A stretch of 64,000 nucleotides of DNA, from the NCBI RefSeq assembly GCF_006345805.1, contig NC_043002.1:107694001-107758000 (forward strand), read 5' to 3'. This DNA is from Octopus sinensis. Taxonomy: Eukaryota. Position numbers and translations under genes: made by a program. The notes under the pieces were generated by a model, which did not search any database, was not told the DNA's origin, and saw only the letters and a program-made list of their open reading frames with translations. Below, piece by piece: positions 21,490 to 63,365 of the stretch. Numbering within the stretch: the stretch's first letter is position 1; each line of letters opens with the position of its first letter.

Positions 21490-21977
21490 CCTTTCTAATA
21501 TAGGCACAAGGCCTGAAATTTGGAGGGAAGGAGCCAGACGATTAGATCGATCCCAGTACGCAACTGGTACTTAATTTATCGACCCCGAAAGGATGAAAGA
21601 CAAAGTCGACCTCGGCGGAATTTGAACCCATCCCGCTCAAAAGGTCCCTGAATAAGGATTGTTTAAGGATGTTGAACAAAACACCCATGTTTCCAGAGGT
21701 GAATTATTCAAACCCCAAAGAATCCCTCTCAACACATGGCTATGATGCTCCCCCACTACTTCTGCTCGTGATCAGAGACGCACATGTCATCAGCCACTAA
21801 GGGACATGCTCAACTGGTTAAGGTCAAACAAATGACAAGCAAATCTGTGGTATTGAGCAGAATATTTGCTGTAGCCCATCTTTTATACCAAGACGAAATA
21901 ATGTACATGATAACACTTCCAATCAGTTAAGATCAGAAGCCATGAGAGCCACTGCCTGGTACTGTATCAGGGCATTT
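21490..21977 (-). mobile_element. Chimera: 5' half of element E fused to the 3' part of SINE A
   Basis: Junction at ~21625 (gatgggtt|caaattccgccg on the minus strand). Confidence 0.75.
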
Positions 21978-22045
21978 GTTATTATTATTATTATTGTTGT
22001 TGTTGTTGTTGTTGTTGTTATCATTATATTGTTTTTGCAAAACTT

Positions 22046-22420
22046 CTAACGCTTGTCGGAGCCCTGGGAACAGTGAGTAAAGAGCTTGAGAAGTACATGG
22101 AACAAATCGGGGCTGTACCTTAGTTCACTGGTAGTGAACTAAGGTAACACCCCTTATTTTTCGAGCACCTTCCGGAGTATTCGAGCGATTCCAATCAGTG
22201 CTGTTTTCTGCAAGTGGTCCACACTTATTGCAGCCCCTTATTTGTTCCGTGTACTTCTCAAGATTTTTACTCACTGATCCCAGGGCTCCGACAATTATTG
22301 GTATTACTACTACTACCACCTTTTTCAGCGACCACAACTGCTTAACTTCCCAAGCTAACCTGTTATATCTTTCGACCTTTCTTTCTTCCTTATCGCATAC
22401 CTTGTTGTCAGCTGGGCATG
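22046..22420 (-). mobile_element. R4/Dong-like RLE LINE 3' end (family 1) with inverted rearrangement
   Basis: Minus frame ...KQLWSLKKVVVVVIPIIVGALGSVSKNLEKY; homologous to 60764-61258. Confidence 0.85.
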
Positions 22421-22443
22421 ATTATCATTATTATTATTATTAT

Positions 22444-22995
22444 TGAGTGAGCGAGCAGAGCATGCCATCAAAGTGACACTGGGGTAAAATATACGAAGCC
22501 CAGTATACCCATCATGACTACCTGTCTGATAAGGGTACACCGGCACATGCATCACAACCTATGTGCGCGACATGGTGATCTCATATCAAGATAAACAGCA
22601 CATGACCTTGCAGGTAGGGCCCAGTTAGAATTTTCTTCAGATCGAGTAACCCATCCGCTCAATAGTTCCTGAATAAGGGTTGTTAAGGATGTTGAACAAA
22701 ACACCCATGTTTCCAGAGGTGAATTATTCAAACCCCAAAGAATCCCTCTCAACACATGGCTATGAGCTCCCCCAACTACTTCTGCTCGTGATCAGAGATG
22801 GACACATCGTCAGCCACTGAGGGACATGCTCAACTGGTTAAGGTCAAACAACTGACAAGCAAATTGTGGTATGAGCAGAATATTTGCTGTAGCCCATCTT
22901 TTATACCAAGACAAAACAATGTACATGATAACACTTCCAATCAGTTAAGATCAGAAGCCATGAGAGCCACTGCCTGGTACTGCATCAGGGCATTT
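22444..22995 (-). mobile_element. Element E: ~555-bp non-coding element in (AAT)n, full length
   Basis: Ends AAATGCCCTGAT... and ...CACTCA shared with 45868-46426; flanked by ATT repeats. Confidence 0.85.
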
Positions 22996-23122
22996 ATTAT
23001 TATTATTATATTATCATTATTATTATTATTATTATTATTATGATTATTATTATTATTATTATTATATTATTATTATTATTACTATACTATTTTTATTATC
23101 ATCATCATCATTATTATTATTA

Positions 23123-23161
<39 letters not shown>

Positions 23162-23814
23162 TATTATTATTATTATTATTATTATGATTATTATTATTCT
23201 TATTCAGTATTATTTCAGTATATGTACAAGATTTGAAAGTTGTATGACTGTCGATTGCACAAATCCGAATGCTTGACTGATTTTTTATTTTATCGACCCT
23301 TGACGGATGATAAGTGAAGATGACCTTAACGTGATGTGAACTCAGAACGTACAAAAAAAAAAGCAAAAAAAAAAAAAAAAAAAAAATCCCCAGAAAGCCG
23401 AAAGAAATAACGCACGGCATTTTGTCCGACTCTAATTAATCTAAGTAGGAGTAGTCACGTTAGATGAAACACAGAATTATAAATACTTTGGAACCAATGA
23501 ACCCGGCTGAGCACAACACACAAATACGAATGAAACATAAATGCTAGCAACGAATATTACACACGTATCAAATTAGCGCATCAACAAGAGCCAAGGTATT
23601 AATAGACTCGCTGAGCCGGTAATAAGTTCTAATTAGTGTTATAATATTATCCACTGGATACTAACCTAACTAATATGATTAGACAGGTGAACACGAATGA
23701 TATTGAATGCGTTTAGAGCGCCACCTGAATCAGATAAAGATTGTATTCGCTACAAATACAAGGGGAGGGGGGTATGGGAGCCTTGAGTAATCTCTTCGTT
23801 TTTTTTTTAATGAT

Positions 23815-25560: not shown

Positions 25561-25813
25561 ACAACTTATAACAACAACAACAACAACAACAACGTTAATG
25601 ATAATAATAATGAAGTTGATGATGATGGTAATGATGGGGATGAGGATGGTGATGAGGATGGTGATGATGATGATGATGATGATGATGACGATTGCTTAGG
25701 CTGCTGTACATCGTAGACACGCCTGTCTAATAAAACACGTTCGGTTTAATGTTTGATATTTTTAGAAAGACATGTCTCCAAAATACACGCCAGACTGTAT
25801 TAGGGGGGGGGGG

Positions 25814-25814
<1 letters not shown>

Positions 25815-25856
<42 letters not shown>

Positions 25857-25893
25857 CAGCAGCAGTAGTAGCAGCAGCAGTAGCAGCAGCAGC

Positions 25894-25928
<35 letters not shown>

Positions 25929-26510
25929 AAGAAGAAGAAGAAGATGATGATGATGATGATGATGATGATGAAGAGGGAGAAGAAGAAGAAGAAGAAGAAA
26001 GAAGAAAGAAGAAGAAGAAGAAGAGAAGAAGAGAAGAAGAGCAAGAAGAAGAGAATAAGAAGAAGAAGAAGAGAAGAGAAGAAGAAGAAAGAAGAAGAAG
26101 AAGAAGAAAGAAGAATAAGAAGAAGAAGAAGACGAAGAAGAAAGAATTAAGAAGAAAGAAGACAAGACGAAGAAGAAAGAAGAAGAAGAAGAAGAAGAAG
26201 AAGATAGAAGAAGAAGAAGAATGAAAAAGACGAAGAAGAAGAAAGAAGAAGAAGAAGAGAAGAAAGAAGAGAGAAGAATAAGAAGATAAGAAGAAGAGAA
26301 ACATAAGATTTCGTATAATGGCATAATAATAATAATAATTCAACTAATAGAAAAGAAGAAGAAGAAGAGAAGAAGAAGAAGAAGAAGAAGAAGACGAAGA
26401 AGCAGAAGAGAAGAGAAGAAGAAGAAGACGAGAAGAAGGAAGAAGAAGAAGAAGAAGAAGAAGAGAAGAAGAAGAGAAGAAGAAGAAGAAGAAGAAGAAG
26501 AAGAAGAAGA
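25815..26510. repeat. Large compound microsatellite (TAG/CAG/GAT/GAA)n
   Basis: Direct inspection; explains ORFs 25727-26535. Confidence 0.95.
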
Positions 26511-27109
26511 CATGTATAGTTTGCCAACTAGGCAACGGAGATTATTTTTAGCGCAATAAGGAATGGAGCACGATGGGTGTGTGTGTGGGTGTGGGGGGTT
26601 ATGAATGTGGGTGAGACTATAACAGTAAACCGTGGTGGTTTCGTGGGTGGGGCGCAATTTTTTTTCTTCTTGTAATGGGTGGAGTGTGGTACGCGCTGAG
26701 TGAATAGCTCTGGTGGCAGAATGGAGTGTAGGCTGAGGCTGGAATATTTGGTGGTGGAGGGCGTAATTGGAGTGGACTGTGTGGGGGGGGGGGGTGGGGG
26801 TGCACAGAAGTGGAGTAAGGACTGGAGAGGACGTCTTGTGGTGGTTGAGAGCAGCAGTGAGTGTAGCTGCTGTTGGAGTGGAGTATCTACTGGAGTTGAG
26901 CAATTACTGGAGGGAAGAGCTTGTGATGCTTGAGTGAGAGTGGAATCATCACAAGCATGTTGTTGTTGTTGTTGCTGTTGTTGTTCAAACGCAGATCAAC
27001 GCTAAACTAGTGAAGCTACCCATCAAGGTCTTTCCAGCCGTGACTCTCACCTCGTTTTGTATCACGGACTACGTTGGCCAGGATTTCGGTTGAGACGTGA
27101 TTTAGACAT

Positions 27110-28133: not shown

Positions 28134-28135
<2 letters not shown>
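27110..28135 (-). mobile_element. SINE B split by two nested insertions in its internal microsatellite
   Basis: 3' half at 27110-27330 and 5' half at 27975-28135, with family F (27420-27600) and SINE D (27678-27930) between. Confidence 0.8.
27420..27600 (+). mobile_element. Unclassified TA-embedded repeat family F (also 47280-47420 minus, 57655-57960 minus), possibly Penelope-like
   Basis: Shared aagattaatcagcc...gatgatccggttcttgactgaaga...cgaatgtcc.gtcc.tg. Confidence 0.6.
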
Positions 28136-28204
<69 letters not shown>

Positions 28205-29004
28205 GTGCCTGTCTGCTTGTCGTTTTATCTATCTACCTATCTATTCAAATATGTACCCGTAATATATAAAAGCGAGACGGTCGCGGATGGATTGATTTTC
28301 ATCATAGATATTGATCAGGGCTTAACCTGGGGTTAAGCCAGCGAATGCCATAAAGAGGGGTTTCTTGGTTTAAAACAAAACCCGTAAAACGTGGGGCGTA
28401 GGGCGAGGAAGAAGAAGACAAAAGAAGAAGAAGAAGAAGAAGAAGAAGAAGAAGAAGAAGAAGAAGAAGAAGAAGAAGAAGAAGAAGAAGAGGTTACTGT
28501 TAGAATTATTGTCATCGTCATTATCAACATCTTCGCCATTATAATCATCATCGTCGTCATCATCATCATCATCATCATCATCGTCATCGTCATCATAGCC
28601 AACATATCAATGCCTCGCTCAACCGCATCATGTCTACCCCTCTCGTTTTCGCTCAATAACATCATGTCTACCCCTCTCTCCACCTTCACTCATCTCTTTC
28701 ATTCCCACCCCTACTGTCAACCTCCACCCACTCATCCCCCCTACCCCAAACTCATTCAATTGCCACCTCACCATTCAACTCCCATTCTTCGTCTCCCTCA
28801 ACTATTTCTGTCTACCCGAATCTCTGAATTCCCTTAGAAATGGCATCTCGTCCAATGCTATCAATATCTGTATGAAGCGTGGAATAAAAGGGACAAACTT
28901 GAGGAAACGGCAGACTCCTATGTTTGAAATAATATCAAAGAATGGTGAAACTGAAGTGCTGGCAATGTCTTTGATTTCAGGAGACGCTATGTACCAACAG
29001 TCTC

Positions 29005-29495
29005 CTACCTACCTACCTGTCAACCTACGTACCAAACATTCTCTACACCGTATACTTTACTACCTACCTACCGACCTACCGACCTACCGACCGACCGACC
29101 GACCCTACCTACCTACTACCTACCTACCTACCTACCTACCTACCTACCTACCTTCCTACCTACCTACCTACTTACCTTCCTACCTACCTACCGACCTACC
29201 GACCTACCTACCTACCTACCTACCTACCTACATACATACCTACCTACCTACCTACCTACCACCTACTACCAACCTACCTAACCTACCTACCTACCTACCT
29301 ACCTACCTACCTACCTACCTACCTTCCTACCTACCTACCTAATTACCTTCCTACCTACCTACCGACCTACCGACCTACCTACCTACCTACCTACCTACCT
29401 ACATACATACCTACCTACCTACCTACCTACCAACCTACCAACCTACCTACCTACCTACCTACCTACCTACCTACTTACCTACCTACCTACCTATC
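29005..29495. repeat. (TACC)n/(CCTA)n microsatellite
   Basis: Direct inspection; explains ORF 28872-29342. Confidence 0.95.
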
Positions 29496-45867: not shown

Positions 45868-46422
45868 TGAGTGAAACAGCAATGCATGCCATCAAAGTGA
45901 CACTGGAGTAAAATATACGAAGCCCACTATACCCGTCACGACTACCTGTCTGATAAGGGTACACCAGGCACATGCAGCACAACTATATGTGCACGAGATG
46001 GTGATCTCATATCAAGATAAACAGCACATGACCTTGCAGGTGGGGCCCAGTTAGAAATTTCTTCTGGCCGAGTAGCCAATCCTGCTCAAAAGGTGCCTGA
46101 ATTAGGATTGTTTAAGCGTGTTGAGTGAACCATCCATGTTTCCAAAGGTGAATTATTCAAACCCCAAAGAATCCCTCTCAACACATGGCTACGATGCTCC
46201 CCAACTACTTCTGCTCGTGATCAGAGATGCACATATCGTCAGTCACTAAGGGACATGCTCAACTGGTTAAGGTCAAACAACTGACAAGCAAATCTGTGGT
46301 ATTGAGCAGAATATTTTCTGTAGCGCATCTTTTATACCAAGACAAAACAATGTACATGATAACACTTCCAATCAGTTAAGATCAGAAGCCATGAGAGCCA
46401 CTGCCTGGTACAGCATCAGGGC

Positions 46423-46426
<4 letters not shown>
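45868..46426 (-). mobile_element. Element E, full length
   Basis: Same ends as 22444-22995; flanked by (ATT)n. Confidence 0.85.
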
Positions 46427-46470
<44 letters not shown>

Positions 46471-46490
46471 CATCGTCATCATCATCATCA

Positions 46491-46575
<85 letters not shown>

Positions 46576-52483: not shown

Positions 52484-53499
52484 CTTGTTTTATTTATATT
52501 CCTGAGCGCCATACTAATACAATTGTTTGTTTGTACTCCACCTGCCTTCGTCTTTTGTTTATTTTTTTCGTAAAGCTTCCCGTTATATATATCCATACAC
52601 CCGCACATACATAAAGACATGCTCATATGTATGGATGAATGGATGAATGAATGCGTGTGTGCCTGCATGGATATGTATCAAGGACTACGATTGCAAACAT
52701 ATTGTGGTTACTTTAGCTATCAACACATGTAAACACAAACCATGCAGAAAACAAAACGAAAAGCTCATTCACAAAATCTCTCCCACACCGCAAAAAAACA
52801 CCACCACAACTATTATTGTTGGCAATATTTGGTGAAAGATTGCCAGCAGCTCTTCAGACAAAGGAATATTTAATAGACATGCAAACTATTACAAAAAAGG
52901 AAAAAGCACTAGAGAATAGTGGATTTACAATAACAATTAAATTCACGCCGAAAACTTAACCTCAAATAATCCTCAGTTAGCGAAACAAAAGTCGTATAAA
53001 CCGTACTTGTAACATAATCTGGTTAAACGCTCCATAGAATTTCAATGAGGAATTCAATATTGTTAAGAATGTCCTAAACTTTATTTAGAATAAGTACTCC
53101 ACAGGACATATATATTCCAAACAGTTTAACAGAAAAAACCTAAAGGTAAGTTACAGTTGCATGACAATTTCAAAGAAAGTCGTCGGGGGGTTAATATTGG
53201 CTATTATCATGTCTTTGGGGCCGATAAAATAAATAAATTGGGTTGATGTAATTGACTGCCACATTCTCAAAACTGCTGGATTTGAGCCAAAATTAGAAAG
53301 AATTATTATTATTGTTATTTTTCTTAATCTGCGCGTCTGATGCAATCACTTACCGGGTCACGTCCCGCGCCTTGTGGCAAGTGAAAGTTAAGAAATGTTT
53401 AGATATAACCGAAAGTTGGGGCAGGGAAAGTGGGACGGGCAGTACAGAAATACGTTTATATAATACAACACAACATAAACGTTTGAATTGATAGGGATT

Positions 53500-53900
53500 G
53501 CTAAGGATGTATACGGTACTTCGATTTCTTTGAATTTCTTTGAGACATGGTTCTCCTGGGATGTTATCTAGCTGTTTCTGACATCTCTTTTTCATGATGC
53601 AGAAGACACCTACAATAATGGCAGTTTTTTGCTTTAAGATGCCACATCTTTTGTATTTCGATTGCAGGTCCTTATATTTACTAAGTTTGCTAAATTCCTT
53701 ATCAAATATGATCTTATCAGCGGGGAAACTTATATCTATCAGTTTACAAGTATTTTCTTCATTGTATTTAATAATCATGTCTGGTTGATTAGCCTGGATC
53801 GTTTCAGTCAGTGTTAAGTGGAAAATCCCGCGAGATAGTGACATTTCTACCTGCAACCATTGGATCAGGATGATGTTCATACAAGTTTGCAGGAATGTTG
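53500..53900 (-). mobile_element. R4/Dong-like RLE LINE 3' region (family 2)
   Basis: TIQANQPDMII...CKLIDISFPAD...KEFSKLSKYKDL; PD-(D/E)xK-type RLE motifs; homologous to 62508-62729. Confidence 0.85.
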
Positions 53901-53956
53901 ATTTGATAATGCTTACATATTTTCTAATATAAACACTGTCCTACCCTACCGTGGCG

Positions 53957-54004
<48 letters not shown>

Positions 54005-54005
<1 letters not shown>

Positions 54006-54290
54006 GAGTGAGAGAGCAGTTCATGCCATCAAAGTGACACTGGGGTAAAATATACGAAGCCCAATATACCCATCATGACTACCCGTCTGATAAGGGTACA
54101 CCAGGCACATGCATCACAACCATATGTGCGCGACATGGTGATCTCATATCAAGATAAACAGCACATGATCTTGCAGGTGGGGCCCAGTTAGAATTTTCTT
54201 CAGGTTGAGTAACCCATCCCGCTCAAAAGGTCCCTGAATAAGGGTTGTTTAAGGAAGCACATGACCTTGCAGGTGGGGCCAGCACATGAC

Positions 54291-54291
<1 letters not shown>
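54005..54291 (-). mobile_element. Element E, 5'-truncated, with duplicated sequence at the junction
   Basis: Intact CACTCA end; truncation followed by a repeat of agcacatgaccttgcaggtggggcc. Confidence 0.85.
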
Positions 54292-54326
<35 letters not shown>

Positions 54327-54639
54327 TATCATCGTCATCATCATCATCATCATCCTTTACCACTGCTACCTGCAGCCTACAGTACTGTGTTATCCGTTCT
54401 TTTCAGCTATCTAATACTTTCCTGATTATTCTGTCCGTGACAAGGAGGCAATCCTTTTGTAACAATTCTACTTGGCTCTTTATTCCAATTTACTTTATAT
54501 TCCCTTTGATGCCTTTTGATTCTGTTCCCAAGAATCCAACAATAATTGGCTCGATCTTCACCTTCTTTATTTTCCATTGCCAGCCTATTTCGTACTTAAG
54601 ACAGTTGTATCTGTCTATCTCTGCGCCTTCCTTCTTGAC

Positions 54640-54706: not shown

Positions 54707-55206
54707 TGAGTGAGAGAGCAGTTCATGCCATCAAAGTGACACTGGGGTAAAATATACGAAGCCCAGTATACCCATCATGACTACCCGTCTGATAAAGGTA
54801 CCCCAGGCACATGCATCACAACCATATGTGCACGACATGGTGATCTCATATCAAGATAAATAGCACGTGACCTTGCAGGTGGGGCCCAGTTAGAAATTTC
54901 TTTTGGTCGAGTAGCCCATCCTGCTCAAAAGGTCCCTGAATAAGGATTGTTTAAGCATGTTGAACGAAACACCCATGTTTCCAGCGGTGAATTATCAAAA
55001 TCCCGAAGAATCCCTCTCAACACATGGCTATGATGCTCCCCCACTACTTCTGCTCGTGATCAGATATGCACATATCGTCAGCCACTAAGGGACATGGTCA
55101 ACTGGTTAAGGTCAAACAACTGACAAGCAAATCTGTGGTATTGAGCAGGATATTTGCTGTAGCCCATTTTTTATACCAAGACAAAACAATGTACATGATA
55201 ACACTT
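54707..55206 (-). mobile_element. Element E, lacking ~55 nt of its 5' end
   Basis: Intact CACTCA end; stops at gataacactt. Confidence 0.85.
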
Positions 55207-55334: not shown

Positions 55335-55500
55335 TGTCTTTGCACAGCTTCTAACGCCGGAGATGTACTACGATGCCAGCTGTTAACTGCCAGTTAACTA
55401 AAGTAACACCCCTTATTTTTCGAGCACCAACCGGAGTATTCGAGCGGTTCCCAGCAGTGCTGTTTTCTTCAGGTGCTCCACCCTTATTGCAGCCCCTATT
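55335..55500 (-). mobile_element. RLE LINE family 1, extreme 3' end
   Basis: Reverse complement of 61095-61258. Confidence 0.85.
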
Positions 55501-55760
55501 TCGAGCACTTTCAAATGCTATGCGCGGAGTTTTGTTCCATACTGAGGGAGAATTGAGAGCTTGGTTGGATCCATTGTTCGAGTCGAAATCGGGTGATTTC
55601 TACATATGAGGTATTGAAAAGCTTGTTAAACTTTGGAAAGAAGTTGTAAACAACAAGGGTGAATACGTTATGAATTAATTAGTCGTTATTTTTTTTATTA
55701 AACCATTTAAGTCATATAAATTTTTATAAAAACGGCGGGAACTTTGTTGCCAAACTAATA
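55501..55760 (+). mobile_element. Mariner 3' end with TIR (same family and flank as 50800-51085)
   Basis: RALSNAMRGVLFHTEGELRAWLDPLFESKSGDFY...VVNNKGEY. Confidence 0.85.
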
Positions 55761-60500: not shown

Positions 60501-60763
60501 TACTATTGCGTATCCAGCTTATTCACGGCAGTCATTGAATCATCAGAAGAAATGAATGAACGGCGCCTCAAGGAATTGTGTTTATTCCATAACATCATTC
60601 AGTGTAGAAGACCAAACCGAAAGCCCCAGAAGCATTGTGCTGCAGCGGGGCCACGTCTAAACTTATAAGGTTATAAATCGGATAGGAAACGTTAGTTGAC
60701 CAGTAGCACAATAGTAATAATACTAATACTAATACTAATACTACTACCACTAATAATAATAAT

Positions 60764-61258
60764 GATTGGTACGGCCACAAACCCGAAGGCATCATCGAAA
60801 ATGATAATGCAAAGATCCTGTGAGATTTTACGATCCAGTGCGACCATGAGACAGAGAATAAGAAGTCGGGCATAATCTTAATTGAGAAAGAAAACAAACT
60901 ATGCTGGATCATAGACATAGCATGCCCGGCTGACAACAAGGTATGCGATAAGGAAGAAAGGAAAGTCGATAGATATGACAGGTTAGCTTGGGAAGTTAAG
61001 CAGTTGTGGTCGAGGAAAAAGGTGGTAGTAGTACCAATAATTGTCGGAGCCCTGGGATCAGTGAGTGAAAGTCTTGAGAAGTACGTGGAATAAATAAGGG
61101 GCTGCAATAAGGGTGGAGCACTTGAAGAAAACAGCACTGCTTGGAACCGCTCGAGTATTCCGGAAGGTGCTCGAAAAATAAGAGGTGTTACCTTAGTTCA
61201 CTGGTAGTGAACAGCTGACATCGTAGTACATCTACAGCGTTAGAAGCTGTGCAAAGGC
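60764..61258 (+). mobile_element. R4/Dong-like RLE LINE, 5'-truncated, in (AAT)n (family 1)
   Basis: WYGHKPEGIIENDNAKIL*DFTIQCD...IIDIACPADNKVCDKEERKVDRYDRLAWEVKQLW...VPIIVGALG. Confidence 0.9.
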
Positions 61259-61301
<43 letters not shown>

Positions 61302-62365: not shown

Positions 62366-62462
62366 ACTCCTGGGCCTACACATACACACACAGCGGTTCT
62401 GTAGTCAAAAATATAAACTTCTGCACGTGATAGTCAACTATACAACTTTCTAAACATAATAA

Positions 62463-62506
<44 letters not shown>

Positions 62507-62901: not shown

Positions 62902-62949
<48 letters not shown>

Positions 62950-63365
62950 CGATGATGATAATAATAATAATGATATAAATATGTATGCATGCATGGAATG
63001 TATGTAGATTCGTATTCGTGTATGTCACAAGTATATATGTGTATATGTATGTAAGTATGACAGTATGTGGGTGCATATTTGTATGTTTCTATGTATATTA
63101 TATGTGTATGTATATATTTATTCATGTATGTATATGTGTCTGTTTATAGGTGTATATGCATGTACATATGTCTCTATGTATCTTTGTATACATGTATCAA
63201 TGTATGTACACATGTATATCAATAAATATATGTGTATAGATGTACGTATGTATGAAAATATGTTTGTAGCTATGTCTGCAAGCTTGTATATATACAAAAG
63301 ACGAAGACAGGTGGTGTACAAAACAAACAGATGTATTAGTATAACGCTCAGGAATAGAAAAAAGT

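What the first reader, a model, noticed from the sequence alone, without database searches (positions are those of the whole stretch)
22444..22995. Element E: non-coding, (AAT)n-targeting retro-element with a fixed 5' end and no tRNA head
Seen: five copies (21625, 22444, 45868, 54005, 54707). Three share the 5' end AAATGCCCTGAT and four share the 3' end CACTC-AATAAT. Two are 5'-truncated, one with junction duplication. All lie in (AAT)n-type tracts in the same orientation as RLE LINE ends, and four directly neighbour one. I found no ORF, no A/B box and no 3' tail shared with the LINEs. Established: Dong/R4-clade RLE elements target (TAA)n. Inference: E is a SINE-like parasite of a site-specific RLE LINE whose defined 5' end comes from an internal promoter or RNA self-processing. 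Local hairpins are present, e.g. CTTCTGATC/GATTGGAAG.
Basis: partly seen in the sequence, partly recalled or inferred. Interest (0 to 1): 0.75.

Follow-up and report, generated by a model that had tools for sequence, protein, structure and literature searches.

The report
Non-coding retroelement in octopus (AAT)n repeats
Element E is a real, roughly 560-base non-coding "hitch-hiker" retrotransposon of an octopus genome that lands in AAT repeats beside LINE elements carrying their own DNA-cutting enzyme; it is an ordinary kind of genomic parasite, and no self-cleaving RNA or internal promoter was found in it.

Summary
The window is Octopus DNA and holds five minus-strand copies of one 559-nt family. 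A sixth, full-length copy lies in an O. bimaculoides intron (L001).

- **Ends:** Four of six copies start within 2 nt of the same base (AAATGCCC). Five end in CACTC followed by (AAT)n.
- **Damaged copies:** Two are 5'-truncated, one with template-jump duplications. One is fused at a GGGTT microhomology to a tRNA-SINE.
- **What E lacks:** No ORF, no LINE protein remnant, no TIR or Helitron ends, no tRNA/5S/7SL/snRNA head, and A/B boxes only at chance level. No Rfam ribozyme and no HDV-like fold were found.
- **Neighbouring LINEs:** They belong to a family whose full-length relatives are about 1100 aa. These have a central RT, a weak zinc-finger match and a C-terminal PD…D domain, with no AP endonuclease. 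Their closest solved relatives are R2 proteins, and they carry (AAT)n tails, so they are Dong-like.
- **Relation to E:** E shares only the (AAT)n tail with them.
- **RNA structure:** The consensus sense RNA, mainly nt 217-559, folds far better than shuffles (z about -5). The antisense strand does not, and the decayed copies fold less well.

Best reading: E is a non-autonomous retroelement copied by target-primed reverse transcription and mobilised in trans by an (AAT)n-specific LINE. This is a new member of a known kind. Nothing tested supports a promoter or ribozyme origin for the 5' end.

The parts
22444..22995 (-). E copy c1, full length (552 nt; consensus 1-559 with several 1-nt deletions)
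   Evidence: 96.6% identical to the consensus
22996..23198 (-). impure (AAT)n tract directly upstream of the c1 5' end
22421..22443 (-). short (AAT)5 GATAATC tail of c1, running into the 5'-truncated LINE-A copy
22031..22420 (-). 5'-truncated LINE-A copy (C-terminal PD…D domain plus 3' UTR, with an internal inverted duplication). Its (AAC)n(AAT)n tail, 21978-22030, leads into c4
21625..21977 (-). E copy c4: consensus 1-353, canonical 5' end, 3'-truncated
21490..21624 (-). 3' part of a tRNA-derived SINE (from about its B box) fused to c4 at a GGGTT/GAGTT microhomology, same orientation, followed by (GGT)n
45868..46426 (-). E copy c2, full length, solitary. 150 nt of (AAT)n/(GAT)n lie upstream (46427-46575); the AATAATAAC tail downstream is short
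54707..55206 (-). E copy c3, 5'-truncated at consensus position 60, between (AAT/AAG/AAC)n and (AAC)n(AAT)n
54005..54291 (-). E copy c5: consensus 309-559 (54255-54005), preceded by a 25-nt repeat of E 380-404 (54280-54256) and an 11-nt repeat of E 394-404 (54291-54281). It is joined to the (GAT)n tail of LINE-B
55335..55520 (-). LINE-A 3' end (…GTGCAAAGAC) with an (AAT)n tail, upstream of c3
54390..54638 (-). LINE-B 3' fragment (same C-terminal domain family) with a (GAT)n tail, between c3 and c5
   Evidence: read directly and translated by eye
53310..53958 (-). LINE-C 5'-truncated fragment (degenerate PD…D domain ORF, 53350-53880), directly downstream of the c5 (AAT)15 tail
60763..61300 (+). 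LINE-A copy on the other strand, with AAT at its 5' junction and an (AAT)14 tail on that strand. It shows the orientation rule

Best explanation
E is a roughly 560-nt non-coding, non-autonomous non-LTR retrotransposon of Octopus. It resembles a SINE in lifestyle but has no recognisable RNA polymerase III head.

**Proposed mechanism**
- Its RNA ends in ...CACUC(AAU)n.
- An (AAT)n-specific, restriction-like-endonuclease LINE of the Dong/R4 kind nicks the (TTA)n strand of an AAT microsatellite. Such LINE copies fill the same tracts.
- The (AAU)n tail anneals to the nick, and the LINE reverse transcriptase copies E in trans by target-primed reverse transcription.
- Premature stops and template jumps give the 5'-truncated and chimeric copies.
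- Every insertion brings a new (AAT)n tail, so E and LINE copies pile up head-to-tail in the same tracts.
- The compact predicted structure of the 3' 340 nt of the sense RNA is the likely handle for the enzyme.

**The constant 5' junction**
It most likely arises in one of two ways. Either E has a fixed transcript start, or it is co-transcribed with upstream (AAT)n and the cDNA end anneals to the target tract.

**Shown versus inferred**
- Shown: the anatomy of the copies, the absence of coding capacity, the tails and orientation, the LINE architecture, and the excess predicted folding.
- Inferred: trans-mobilisation by this particular LINE group, the role of the 3' domain, and the way the 5' end is set.
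For: **Copies and ends**
- Six copies share one unit. Four have 5' ends within 2 nt of each other, next to unrelated upstream sequence. Five have the same 3' end plus (AAT)n.
- Two 5' truncations have intact 3' ends; one carries duplicated template-jump segments. One copy is an E/tRNA-SINE chimera at a 4-5 nt microhomology.
- The consensus has no ORF, and E shows no similarity to 163 LINE-family and other proteins apart from three octopus gene models that swallowed E.
- There are no inverted repeats at the ends.

**Position and orientation**
- AAT-type tracts cover under 2% of the window, yet every copy abuts one, and always with AAT on the sense strand. All three LINE-A copies follow the same rule.

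**The LINE family**
- Full-length relatives of the LINE-A C-terminal domain are about 1100 aa. They have RVT_1 at about 450-720, weak zf-RVT matches at about 900-950 and the domain at the extreme C-terminus, with no AP endonuclease.
- The best solved relatives are R2 proteins.
- LINE-A relatives in another species also end in (AAT)n.
- Dong-R4 is reported as the LINE group with the most recent insertions in O. vulgaris (PMC13282606). A full-length Dong is reported in the O. bimaculoides repeat library (PMC9115989).

**RNA folding**
- Consensus RNA: MFE -197.9 kcal/mol, z = -4.5 to -4.8.
- Positions 217-559 alone: z = -5.1. Antisense strand: z = -0.3.
- Decayed copies: z = -0.5 to -2.5. This matches simulated random mutation of the consensus.
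Against: - E shares no sequence with the 3' UTRs of the three LINE families in the window, only the microsatellite tail. The partner is therefore not identified.
- Only six copies from about 150 kb were available, so there is no genome-wide 5'-end histogram and no empty sites.
- The structure rests on thermodynamics alone. Only 1 of 128 predicted pairs shows a compensatory change.
- Petrosino et al. (PMC9115989) found no evidence of recent Dong activity in O. bimaculoides.
- I-clade and some RTE-type LINEs also carry TAA-like tails (PMC3747384).
- The L001 copy has only about 10 nt of AAT upstream, so a long pre-existing tract is not required.
Confidence: 0.7

Rival explanations
1. E is an internally deleted derivative of an (AAT)n-specific LINE family that is not present in this window. 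It would keep only that LINE's 5' UTR and 3' UTR, like the SIDEs of R2.
For: - Relatives of LINE-A in another species exist as copies with the RT deleted (L002: the N-terminal ORFs are followed directly by the C-terminal domain). Internal deletion is therefore common in this group.
- O. vulgaris has at least 5 recently active Dong-R4 families (PMC13282606), so unseen parents are plausible.
- A fixed 5' end plus a structured 3' domain fits a 5' UTR joined to a 3' UTR.
Against: - E has no coding remnant and no similarity to LINE-A, LINE-B or LINE-C, or to the LINE copies in L002-L004.
- No full-length octopus Dong could be fetched for comparison.
Confidence: 0.2
2. One reading: the fixed 5' end is produced by a self-cleaving ribozyme or by an internal (RNA polymerase III) promoter within the first 100 nt or so of E.
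For: - Four of six copies begin within 2 nt of one another.
- The first 104 nt can fold into one long hairpin domain, with z = -1.8.
- R2 elements and their SIDEs use a 5' HDV-like ribozyme (established knowledge).
Against: - Three permissive Rfam scans of four full 5' ends found no ribozyme, tRNA, 5S, 7SL or snRNA match.
- ARAGORN found nothing.
- A/B-box matches are at or below chance, and none lies near the 5' end.
- A strict HDV-like descriptor gave 0 solutions. A relaxed one gave fewer than shuffles, and none was shared between copies.
- The CUGAUGC at nt 8-14 lacks the invariant A of the hammerhead core and is CUGAUAC in c4.
Confidence: 0.15
3. E is mobilised by a LINE of another clade that also carries a TAA-type tail (I-like, RTE or CR1-like). 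Its position next to RLE LINE fragments only reflects a shared liking for AAT tracts.
For: - The I element ends in TAA repeats (PMC3747384).
- RTE and CR1 are abundant and active in octopus (PMC13282606, PMC9115989).
- E shares no 3' sequence with LINE-A.
Against: - AAT lies on both flanks of most copies, with a strict orientation rule. That pattern is typical of site-specific RLE elements.
- The only AAT-tailed LINEs seen in 150 kb are of the RLE type.
Confidence: 0.1
4. E is simply the 3' UTR or 3' end of a longer coding LINE, or it is a DNA transposon or Helitron.
For: Its 3' end with a microsatellite tail looks like a LINE end.
Against: - Four copies stop at the same 5' base against four unrelated flanks: an AAT tract, a LINE-A tail, and unique intron DNA.
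- There are no TIRs.
- The ends are AAATGCC...CACTCA, not TC...CTRR.
- The 5' truncations and template-jump junctions are hallmarks of retrotransposition.
Confidence: 0.03

Closest known systems
SIDEs (short internally deleted elements) of R2 in Drosophila
   Same: Both are short, non-coding, non-autonomous elements. Both depend on a site-specific restriction-like-endonuclease LINE, insert at the LINE's own target in the LINE's orientation, and have a defined 5' end and a structured 3' region.
   Different: SIDEs demonstrably keep the parent's 5' HDV-like ribozyme and its 3' UTR. E shows no ribozyme and no sequence shared with the LINEs at hand. Its target is a dispersed microsatellite rather than rDNA.
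Classical LINE-partnered SINEs, for example the tRNA-derived octopus SINEs that are also present in this window
   Same: Both are short and non-coding, are copied by target-primed reverse transcription, are often 5'-truncated, have a microsatellite-type tail, and occur in many copies.
   Different: E has no tRNA, 5S, 7SL or snRNA head and no A/B boxes. It has no LINE-derived 3' tail sequence beyond the (AAT)n repeat itself.
Dong (Bombyx mori) and other R4-clade LINEs that insert in (TAA)n
   Same: The target and tail are (TAA)n/(AAT)n, with strand-specific orientation and stacking of copies within one tract. The window's LINE-A family has the matching architecture: RT, zinc finger, C-terminal PD…D domain, and no AP endonuclease.
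   Different: E encodes nothing, so it could only be a passenger of such elements and not a member of the clade.

Membership tests
SINE in the strict sense | 5' head derived from tRNA, 7SL, 5S or snRNA, with an internal RNA polymerase III promoter (A and B boxes) | tested here: not met
   ARAGORN found 0 genes. Rfam permissive scans gave no such match. Box matches are at or below chance and none lies near the 5' end.
SINE in the strict sense | 3' end sequence shared with the partner LINE | tested here: not met
   Only the (AAT)n tail is shared with LINE-A, LINE-B and LINE-C. Other octopus LINE families could not be examined.
SINE in the strict sense | Short, non-coding, dispersed, with retroposition hallmarks (intact 3' end, 5' truncation) | tested here: met
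   A 559-nt consensus without an ORF. Six copies at four loci. Two 5' truncations with template-jump junctions.
R2-type SIDE (internally deleted LINE) | 5' and 3' ends identical to those of a full-length parent LINE | tested here: inconclusive
   No match to the LINE fragments available. No full-length octopus Dong was obtainable with these tools.
R2-type SIDE (internally deleted LINE) | HDV-like self-cleaving ribozyme at the 5' end | tested here: not met
   No Rfam match. The home-made descriptor gave 0 strict solutions, and relaxed solutions no more often than in shuffles. A new ribozyme class cannot be excluded.
Dong/R4-clade RLE LINE (the neighbouring LINE-A, not E) | Single ORF with a central RT, no N-terminal AP endonuclease, and a C-terminal zinc finger plus PD-(D/E)XK nuclease | tested here: inconclusive
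   **Met:** full-length relatives have RVT_1 in the centre and no Exo_endo_phos domain, and R2 proteins are the best PDB hits. The R/KPD…IDIA motif is visible.

**Not settled:** the zf-RVT matches are below Pfam's cut-off, and the nuclease fold is not confirmed. The AlphaFold model has pLDDT 46, and the domain has no PDB sequence match. No clade phylogeny was done.
Dong/R4-clade RLE LINE (the neighbouring LINE-A, not E) | Insertion into (TAA)n with a (TAA)n-type 3' tail | tested here: met
   All three window copies and the L003 copy end in (AAT)n; the remaining relatives in L002 and L004 keep only 2-3 AAT units. Two of the three window copies have AAT at the 5' junction.
Helitron or TIR DNA transposon | TC…CTRR ends with a 3' hairpin, or terminal inverted repeats with a TSD | tested here: not met
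   The ends are AAATGCC…CACTCA. No inverted repeats were found in c1 plus flanks.

The most novel reading that the evidence does not exclude
E carries an RNA device of a kind not yet in Rfam. This could be a new self-cleaving motif or a promoter-independent 5'-end-defining structure in its first 100 nt or so. It could also be a specific 340-nt 3' recognition domain that lets a headless RNA capture a Dong-type reverse transcriptase with which it shares no sequence.
Probability: 0.1. Interest if true: 0.7.

Novelty: new member of a known kind. Interest (0 to 1): 0.3.

Why it matters
Octopus genomes are about two-thirds repeats, and hundreds of "unclassified SINE" families are reported (PMC13282606). 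E is a clear, dissectable example of one: a headless passenger that appears to ride a microsatellite-specific LINE.

- It helps explain how AAT tracts in octopus grow into nested arrays of retroelements.
- It contaminates gene models. Three octopus protein models (at least two of them from O. bimaculoides) contain E-derived peptides.
- It offers a small RNA substrate for testing what a Dong-type enzyme recognises, which has practical interest given current work on R2-like enzymes for DNA insertion.

It does not change any general concept of retrotransposition.

Tried and rejected
**Searches that led nowhere**
- A protein search with the degenerate LINE-C ORF found nothing.
- Pfam on the same ORF found nothing.
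- A search with concatenated six-frame E peptides returned only three octopus gene models, not raw copies. Only one of the three had DNA on record.
- LINE-A hits came only from ENA contigs of another species, about 76% identical at the DNA level. These carry no E.
- The single metagenome scan used a 16-mer that was too short, and it returned only chance hits.
- Longer patterns found nothing in the prokaryotic genome or viral collections.
- Looking up a window ORF to name the source assembly failed.

**Tests that were inconclusive**
- The structure prediction of the LINE C-terminal domain was too poor to search with (pLDDT 46).
- A sequence search of that domain against the PDB gave only chance SH3-like hits.
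- Covariation on six near-identical copies has no power.

**Resemblances considered and rejected**
- A hammerhead at the 5' end: CUGAUGC lacks the invariant A, and it varies in c4.
- U1-like or 5S-like similarity in nt 15-65: noted by eye, with no Rfam support at E <= 10.
- The (TAA)n at 28134-28169 as the tail of a tRNA-SINE: the SINE is on the other strand, so the tract lies at its 5' side.

Full report
**1. What is there**

The window is cephalopod DNA. Peptides translated from the element match only Octopus proteins. One of these, a PP2A B55 subunit model, led to an 86-kb stretch of O. bimaculoides chromosome CM046622.1 (L001).

BLAST of 22444-22995 against the window gives five copies, all on the minus strand:
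- c1, 22995->22444: full length.
- c2, 46426->45868: full length.
- c3, 55206->54707: starts at position 60.
- c4, 21977->21625: positions 1-353.
- c5, 54255->54005: positions 309-559.

A majority consensus is 559 nt. The window's five copies are 90-98% identical to each other and 94-97% identical to the consensus. L001 holds a sixth, full-length copy that is 90% identical to the consensus (70544-71102). A profile search found no further or older copies in the window, L001 or 60 kb of another species.

**2. Ends and junctions**

c1, c2 and c4 begin AAATGCCCTGAT immediately after ...AATAAT or ...AATAAC. The L001 copy begins ATGCCCTGAT after unique intron sequence that ends in only AAATAATAAT. 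So four of six copies start within 2 nt of one another, next to four unrelated upstream contexts.

c1, c2, c3, c5 and the L001 copy end ...CTCACTC followed by AAT repeats. The repeat number varies from 2-3 units to 15.

c3 is a plain 5' truncation. c5 is joined to a (GAT)n tract through two extra pieces of E: an 11-nt copy of E 394-404, then a 25-nt copy of E 380-404, and then E 309-559. This is the signature of a reverse transcriptase that jumps templates at the end of synthesis.

c4 stops at E 353 and continues into the abundant tRNA-derived octopus SINE. The join is across a shared GGGTT/GAGTT, runs from about the SINE's B box to its 3' end, and is in the same orientation. The rest of E is not found downstream. 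c4 is therefore either a template-switch chimera or the product of a later microhomology-mediated deletion.

**3. What it is not**

- **Not coding.** The consensus has stops in all six frames, and no stop-free stretch reaches 60 codons. tblastn of 163 proteins, including full-length LINE relatives, gives only chance matches. The exceptions are three octopus gene models that contain E.
- **Not a DNA transposon.** There are no terminal inverted repeats, and the ends are not Helitron ends.
- **No recognisable head.** ARAGORN finds no tRNA in the window. Rfam at gathering thresholds finds nothing in 64 kb. Permissive Rfam scans of c1/c4, c2 and the L001 copy find no tRNA, 5S, 7SL, snRNA or ribozyme family. 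The only hits are noise from the AAT/AAC repeats and matches with E above 2.
- **No A/B boxes.** Matches occur at or below the rate in shuffles, and none lies near the 5' end.
- **No HDV-like fold.** A strict descriptor placed around the 5' end gives no solution in any of the four full 5' ends. A relaxed one gives fewer solutions than shuffled sequence, and none is shared between copies.

**4. The neighbours**

On the minus strand the arrangement in the first cluster is: (AAT)n, c1, (AAT)5, 5'-truncated LINE-A, (AAC)n(AAT)n, c4.

In the second cluster it is: LINE-A 3' end, (AAT/AAG/AAC)n, c3, (AAC)n(AAT)n, LINE-B 3' fragment, (GAT)n, c5, (AAT)15, 5'-truncated LINE-C. A third LINE-A copy lies on the plus strand at 60763-61300, with its (AAT)14 tail on that strand.

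The three LINE fragments encode the same kind of C-terminal domain: ...KILWDF.IQCDH....R/KPDIV...IIDIA.P.D...EK..(K/R)Y..L..E....W.....V.PIIVGALG...LQKTALLGTARILRKVL.

An exhaustive search with an intact relative of this domain (P0004) finds 8370 proteins. In the long hits (about 1050-1300 aa) the domain sits at the extreme C-terminus. Six of the long hits were scanned against Pfam:
- RVT_1 lies at about residues 450-720 (639-890 in the 1304-aa protein).
- Five of the six have a weak zf-RVT match at about 870-960, below Pfam's cut-off.
- None has an AP-endonuclease domain.

By sequence, the closest solved structures are R2 retrotransposon proteins (E = 1e-29).

This is the architecture of restriction-like-endonuclease LINEs. 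Together with the (AAT)n tail it fits the Dong/R4 group. That tail is also seen on a related copy in another species (L003); the other related copies keep only 2-3 AAT units before different sequence. The literature reports Dong-R4 as abundant and recently active in O. vulgaris (PMC13282606) and present with a complete ORF in the O. bimaculoides repeat library (PMC9115989).

I could not confirm the nuclease fold itself. The AlphaFold model was poor (pLDDT 46), so I did not run a fold search on it.

**5. Relation of E to these LINEs**

E shares only the (AAT)n tail and its orientation with them. There is no sequence similarity to the 3' UTR of LINE-A (about 80 nt) or to LINE-B or LINE-C.

Both 3' ends are predicted to form two hairpins, followed by about 10 unpaired nt and then the repeat. 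That resemblance is generic and proves nothing.

AAT-type tracts make up under 2% of the window. Even so, every E copy touches one on its 3' side, and the full-length copies touch one on both sides. This pattern, with the strict orientation rule, is what a strand-specific microsatellite-targeting enzyme would produce. The L001 copy shows that about 10 nt of AAT upstream is enough.

**6. RNA structure**

| Sequence | MFE (kcal/mol) | z against dinucleotide shuffles |
|---|---|---|
| Consensus sense RNA | -197.9 | -4.5 to -4.8 |
| Positions 217-559 | -134.9 | -5.1 |
| Positions 1-216 | -60.2 | -1.0 |
| Antisense strand | -142.2 | -0.3 |
| Individual copies | -165 to -179 | -0.5 to -2.5 |

The energies of the individual copies match those obtained by randomly mutating the consensus at 3.5-10%.

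A structure that is strongest in the reconstructed master and decays in dead copies is what one expects of a functional RNA template. It also rests on 20 G-U pairs out of 122, so it is much weaker on the opposite strand.

Six near-identical copies give no covariation power; only 1 compensatory pair was seen among 128. The structure therefore remains a prediction.

**7. Mechanism and the 5' end**

The best-supported account is trans-mobilisation by an (AAT)n-specific RLE LINE through target-primed reverse transcription. The (AAU)n tail would pair with the nicked (TTA)n strand, and the structured 3' domain would be the probable binding site for the enzyme.

The fixed 5' junction does not require a promoter or a ribozyme. 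R1 and R2 are co-transcribed with their rDNA target, and their 5' junctions are thought to form by pairing with that target. By analogy, an E transcript that starts in upstream (AAT)n would yield a cDNA whose end can pair with the target tract, recreating the same junction each time. The 2-nt variation in L001 and the AAC in c4 fit this loosely.

A defined transcription start remains equally possible. The ribozyme idea has no support from the tests available.

**8. Comparison and verdict**

E works like a SINE, or like an R2 SIDE, but it fails the defining tests for both as far as they could be run here. It has no polymerase III head, no LINE-derived 3' sequence and no 5' ribozyme, and no parent LINE was found.

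It is best filed as a new family of headless, non-autonomous non-LTR retrotransposon with an (AAT)n tail. This is a known kind of element. It is probably already present, unnamed, among the hundreds of "unclassified SINE" families in octopus repeat libraries.

Interest is modest.

Noticed in passing
window 21490-21977 (-): E copy c4 is fused after E position 353 to the 3' two-thirds of the abundant tRNA-derived octopus SINE, at a 4-5 nt microhomology (GGGTT/GAGTT). The rest of E is absent downstream. This could be a template-switch chimera between two passenger RNAs, or a later deletion.
   Followed up: partly
window 22053-22115 versus 22231-22294: The LINE-A copy next to c1 carries an inverted duplication of about 64 nt of its own coding region. 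It is inserted into its 3' UTR between the conserved hairpin and the AGCGTTAGAAG end, and looks like a snap-back or template-switch product.
   Followed up: no
L002 6440-8150 (-) and 9280-10560 (+): Relatives of LINE-A in another species (ENA contig ctg3118_88x_l, about 77% identical in DNA) occur as two inverted copies. In each, the N-terminal ORFs are followed directly by an intact 152-aa C-terminal domain ORF with its own ATG, and the reverse transcriptase is missing. The 90% protein cluster has 12 members. This may be an amplified RT-less derivative.
   Followed up: partly
window 61180-61258 (+) versus L002 10455-10560 and L003 10360-10460: The LINE-A 3' UTR has two hairpins that are kept between species. 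The first changes from GUUCACU...AGUGAAC to GUUUACU...AGUAAAC, a compensatory C-G to U-A change. This suggests a conserved recognition structure.
   Followed up: partly
window 54390-54638 (-): LINE-B encodes the same C-terminal domain family as LINE-A but ends in (GAT)n/(ATG)n rather than (AAT)n. It may be a sister lineage with a different microsatellite tail or target.
   Followed up: no
L001 70968-71160 (+); proteins P0001, P0002, P0003: Three Octopus protein models contain E-derived peptides. In the PP2A B55 model, P0003 reads the sense strand of E's last 130 nt or so and translates the (AAT)n tail as poly-Asn, just upstream of a genuine exon. P0001 and P0002 read E antisense. These are annotation artefacts or exonisation.
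   Followed up: partly
window 62456-62505 and 62903-62969 (+): Further AAT tracts on the plus strand. The first is followed by another 5'-truncated LINE fragment (...FDKLRKYKDLLIEIEK...). The second follows what looks like that fragment's 3' end. A different, unidentified element ends ...CAACTTTCTAAAC just upstream of the first tract. More AAT-tailed families than E and LINE-A are present.
   Followed up: no
window 28973-29450 and 25760-26520: Long arrays with an 8-nt period, and purine-rich or low-complexity arrays, produce spurious long ORFs. They are unrelated to E.
   Followed up: no
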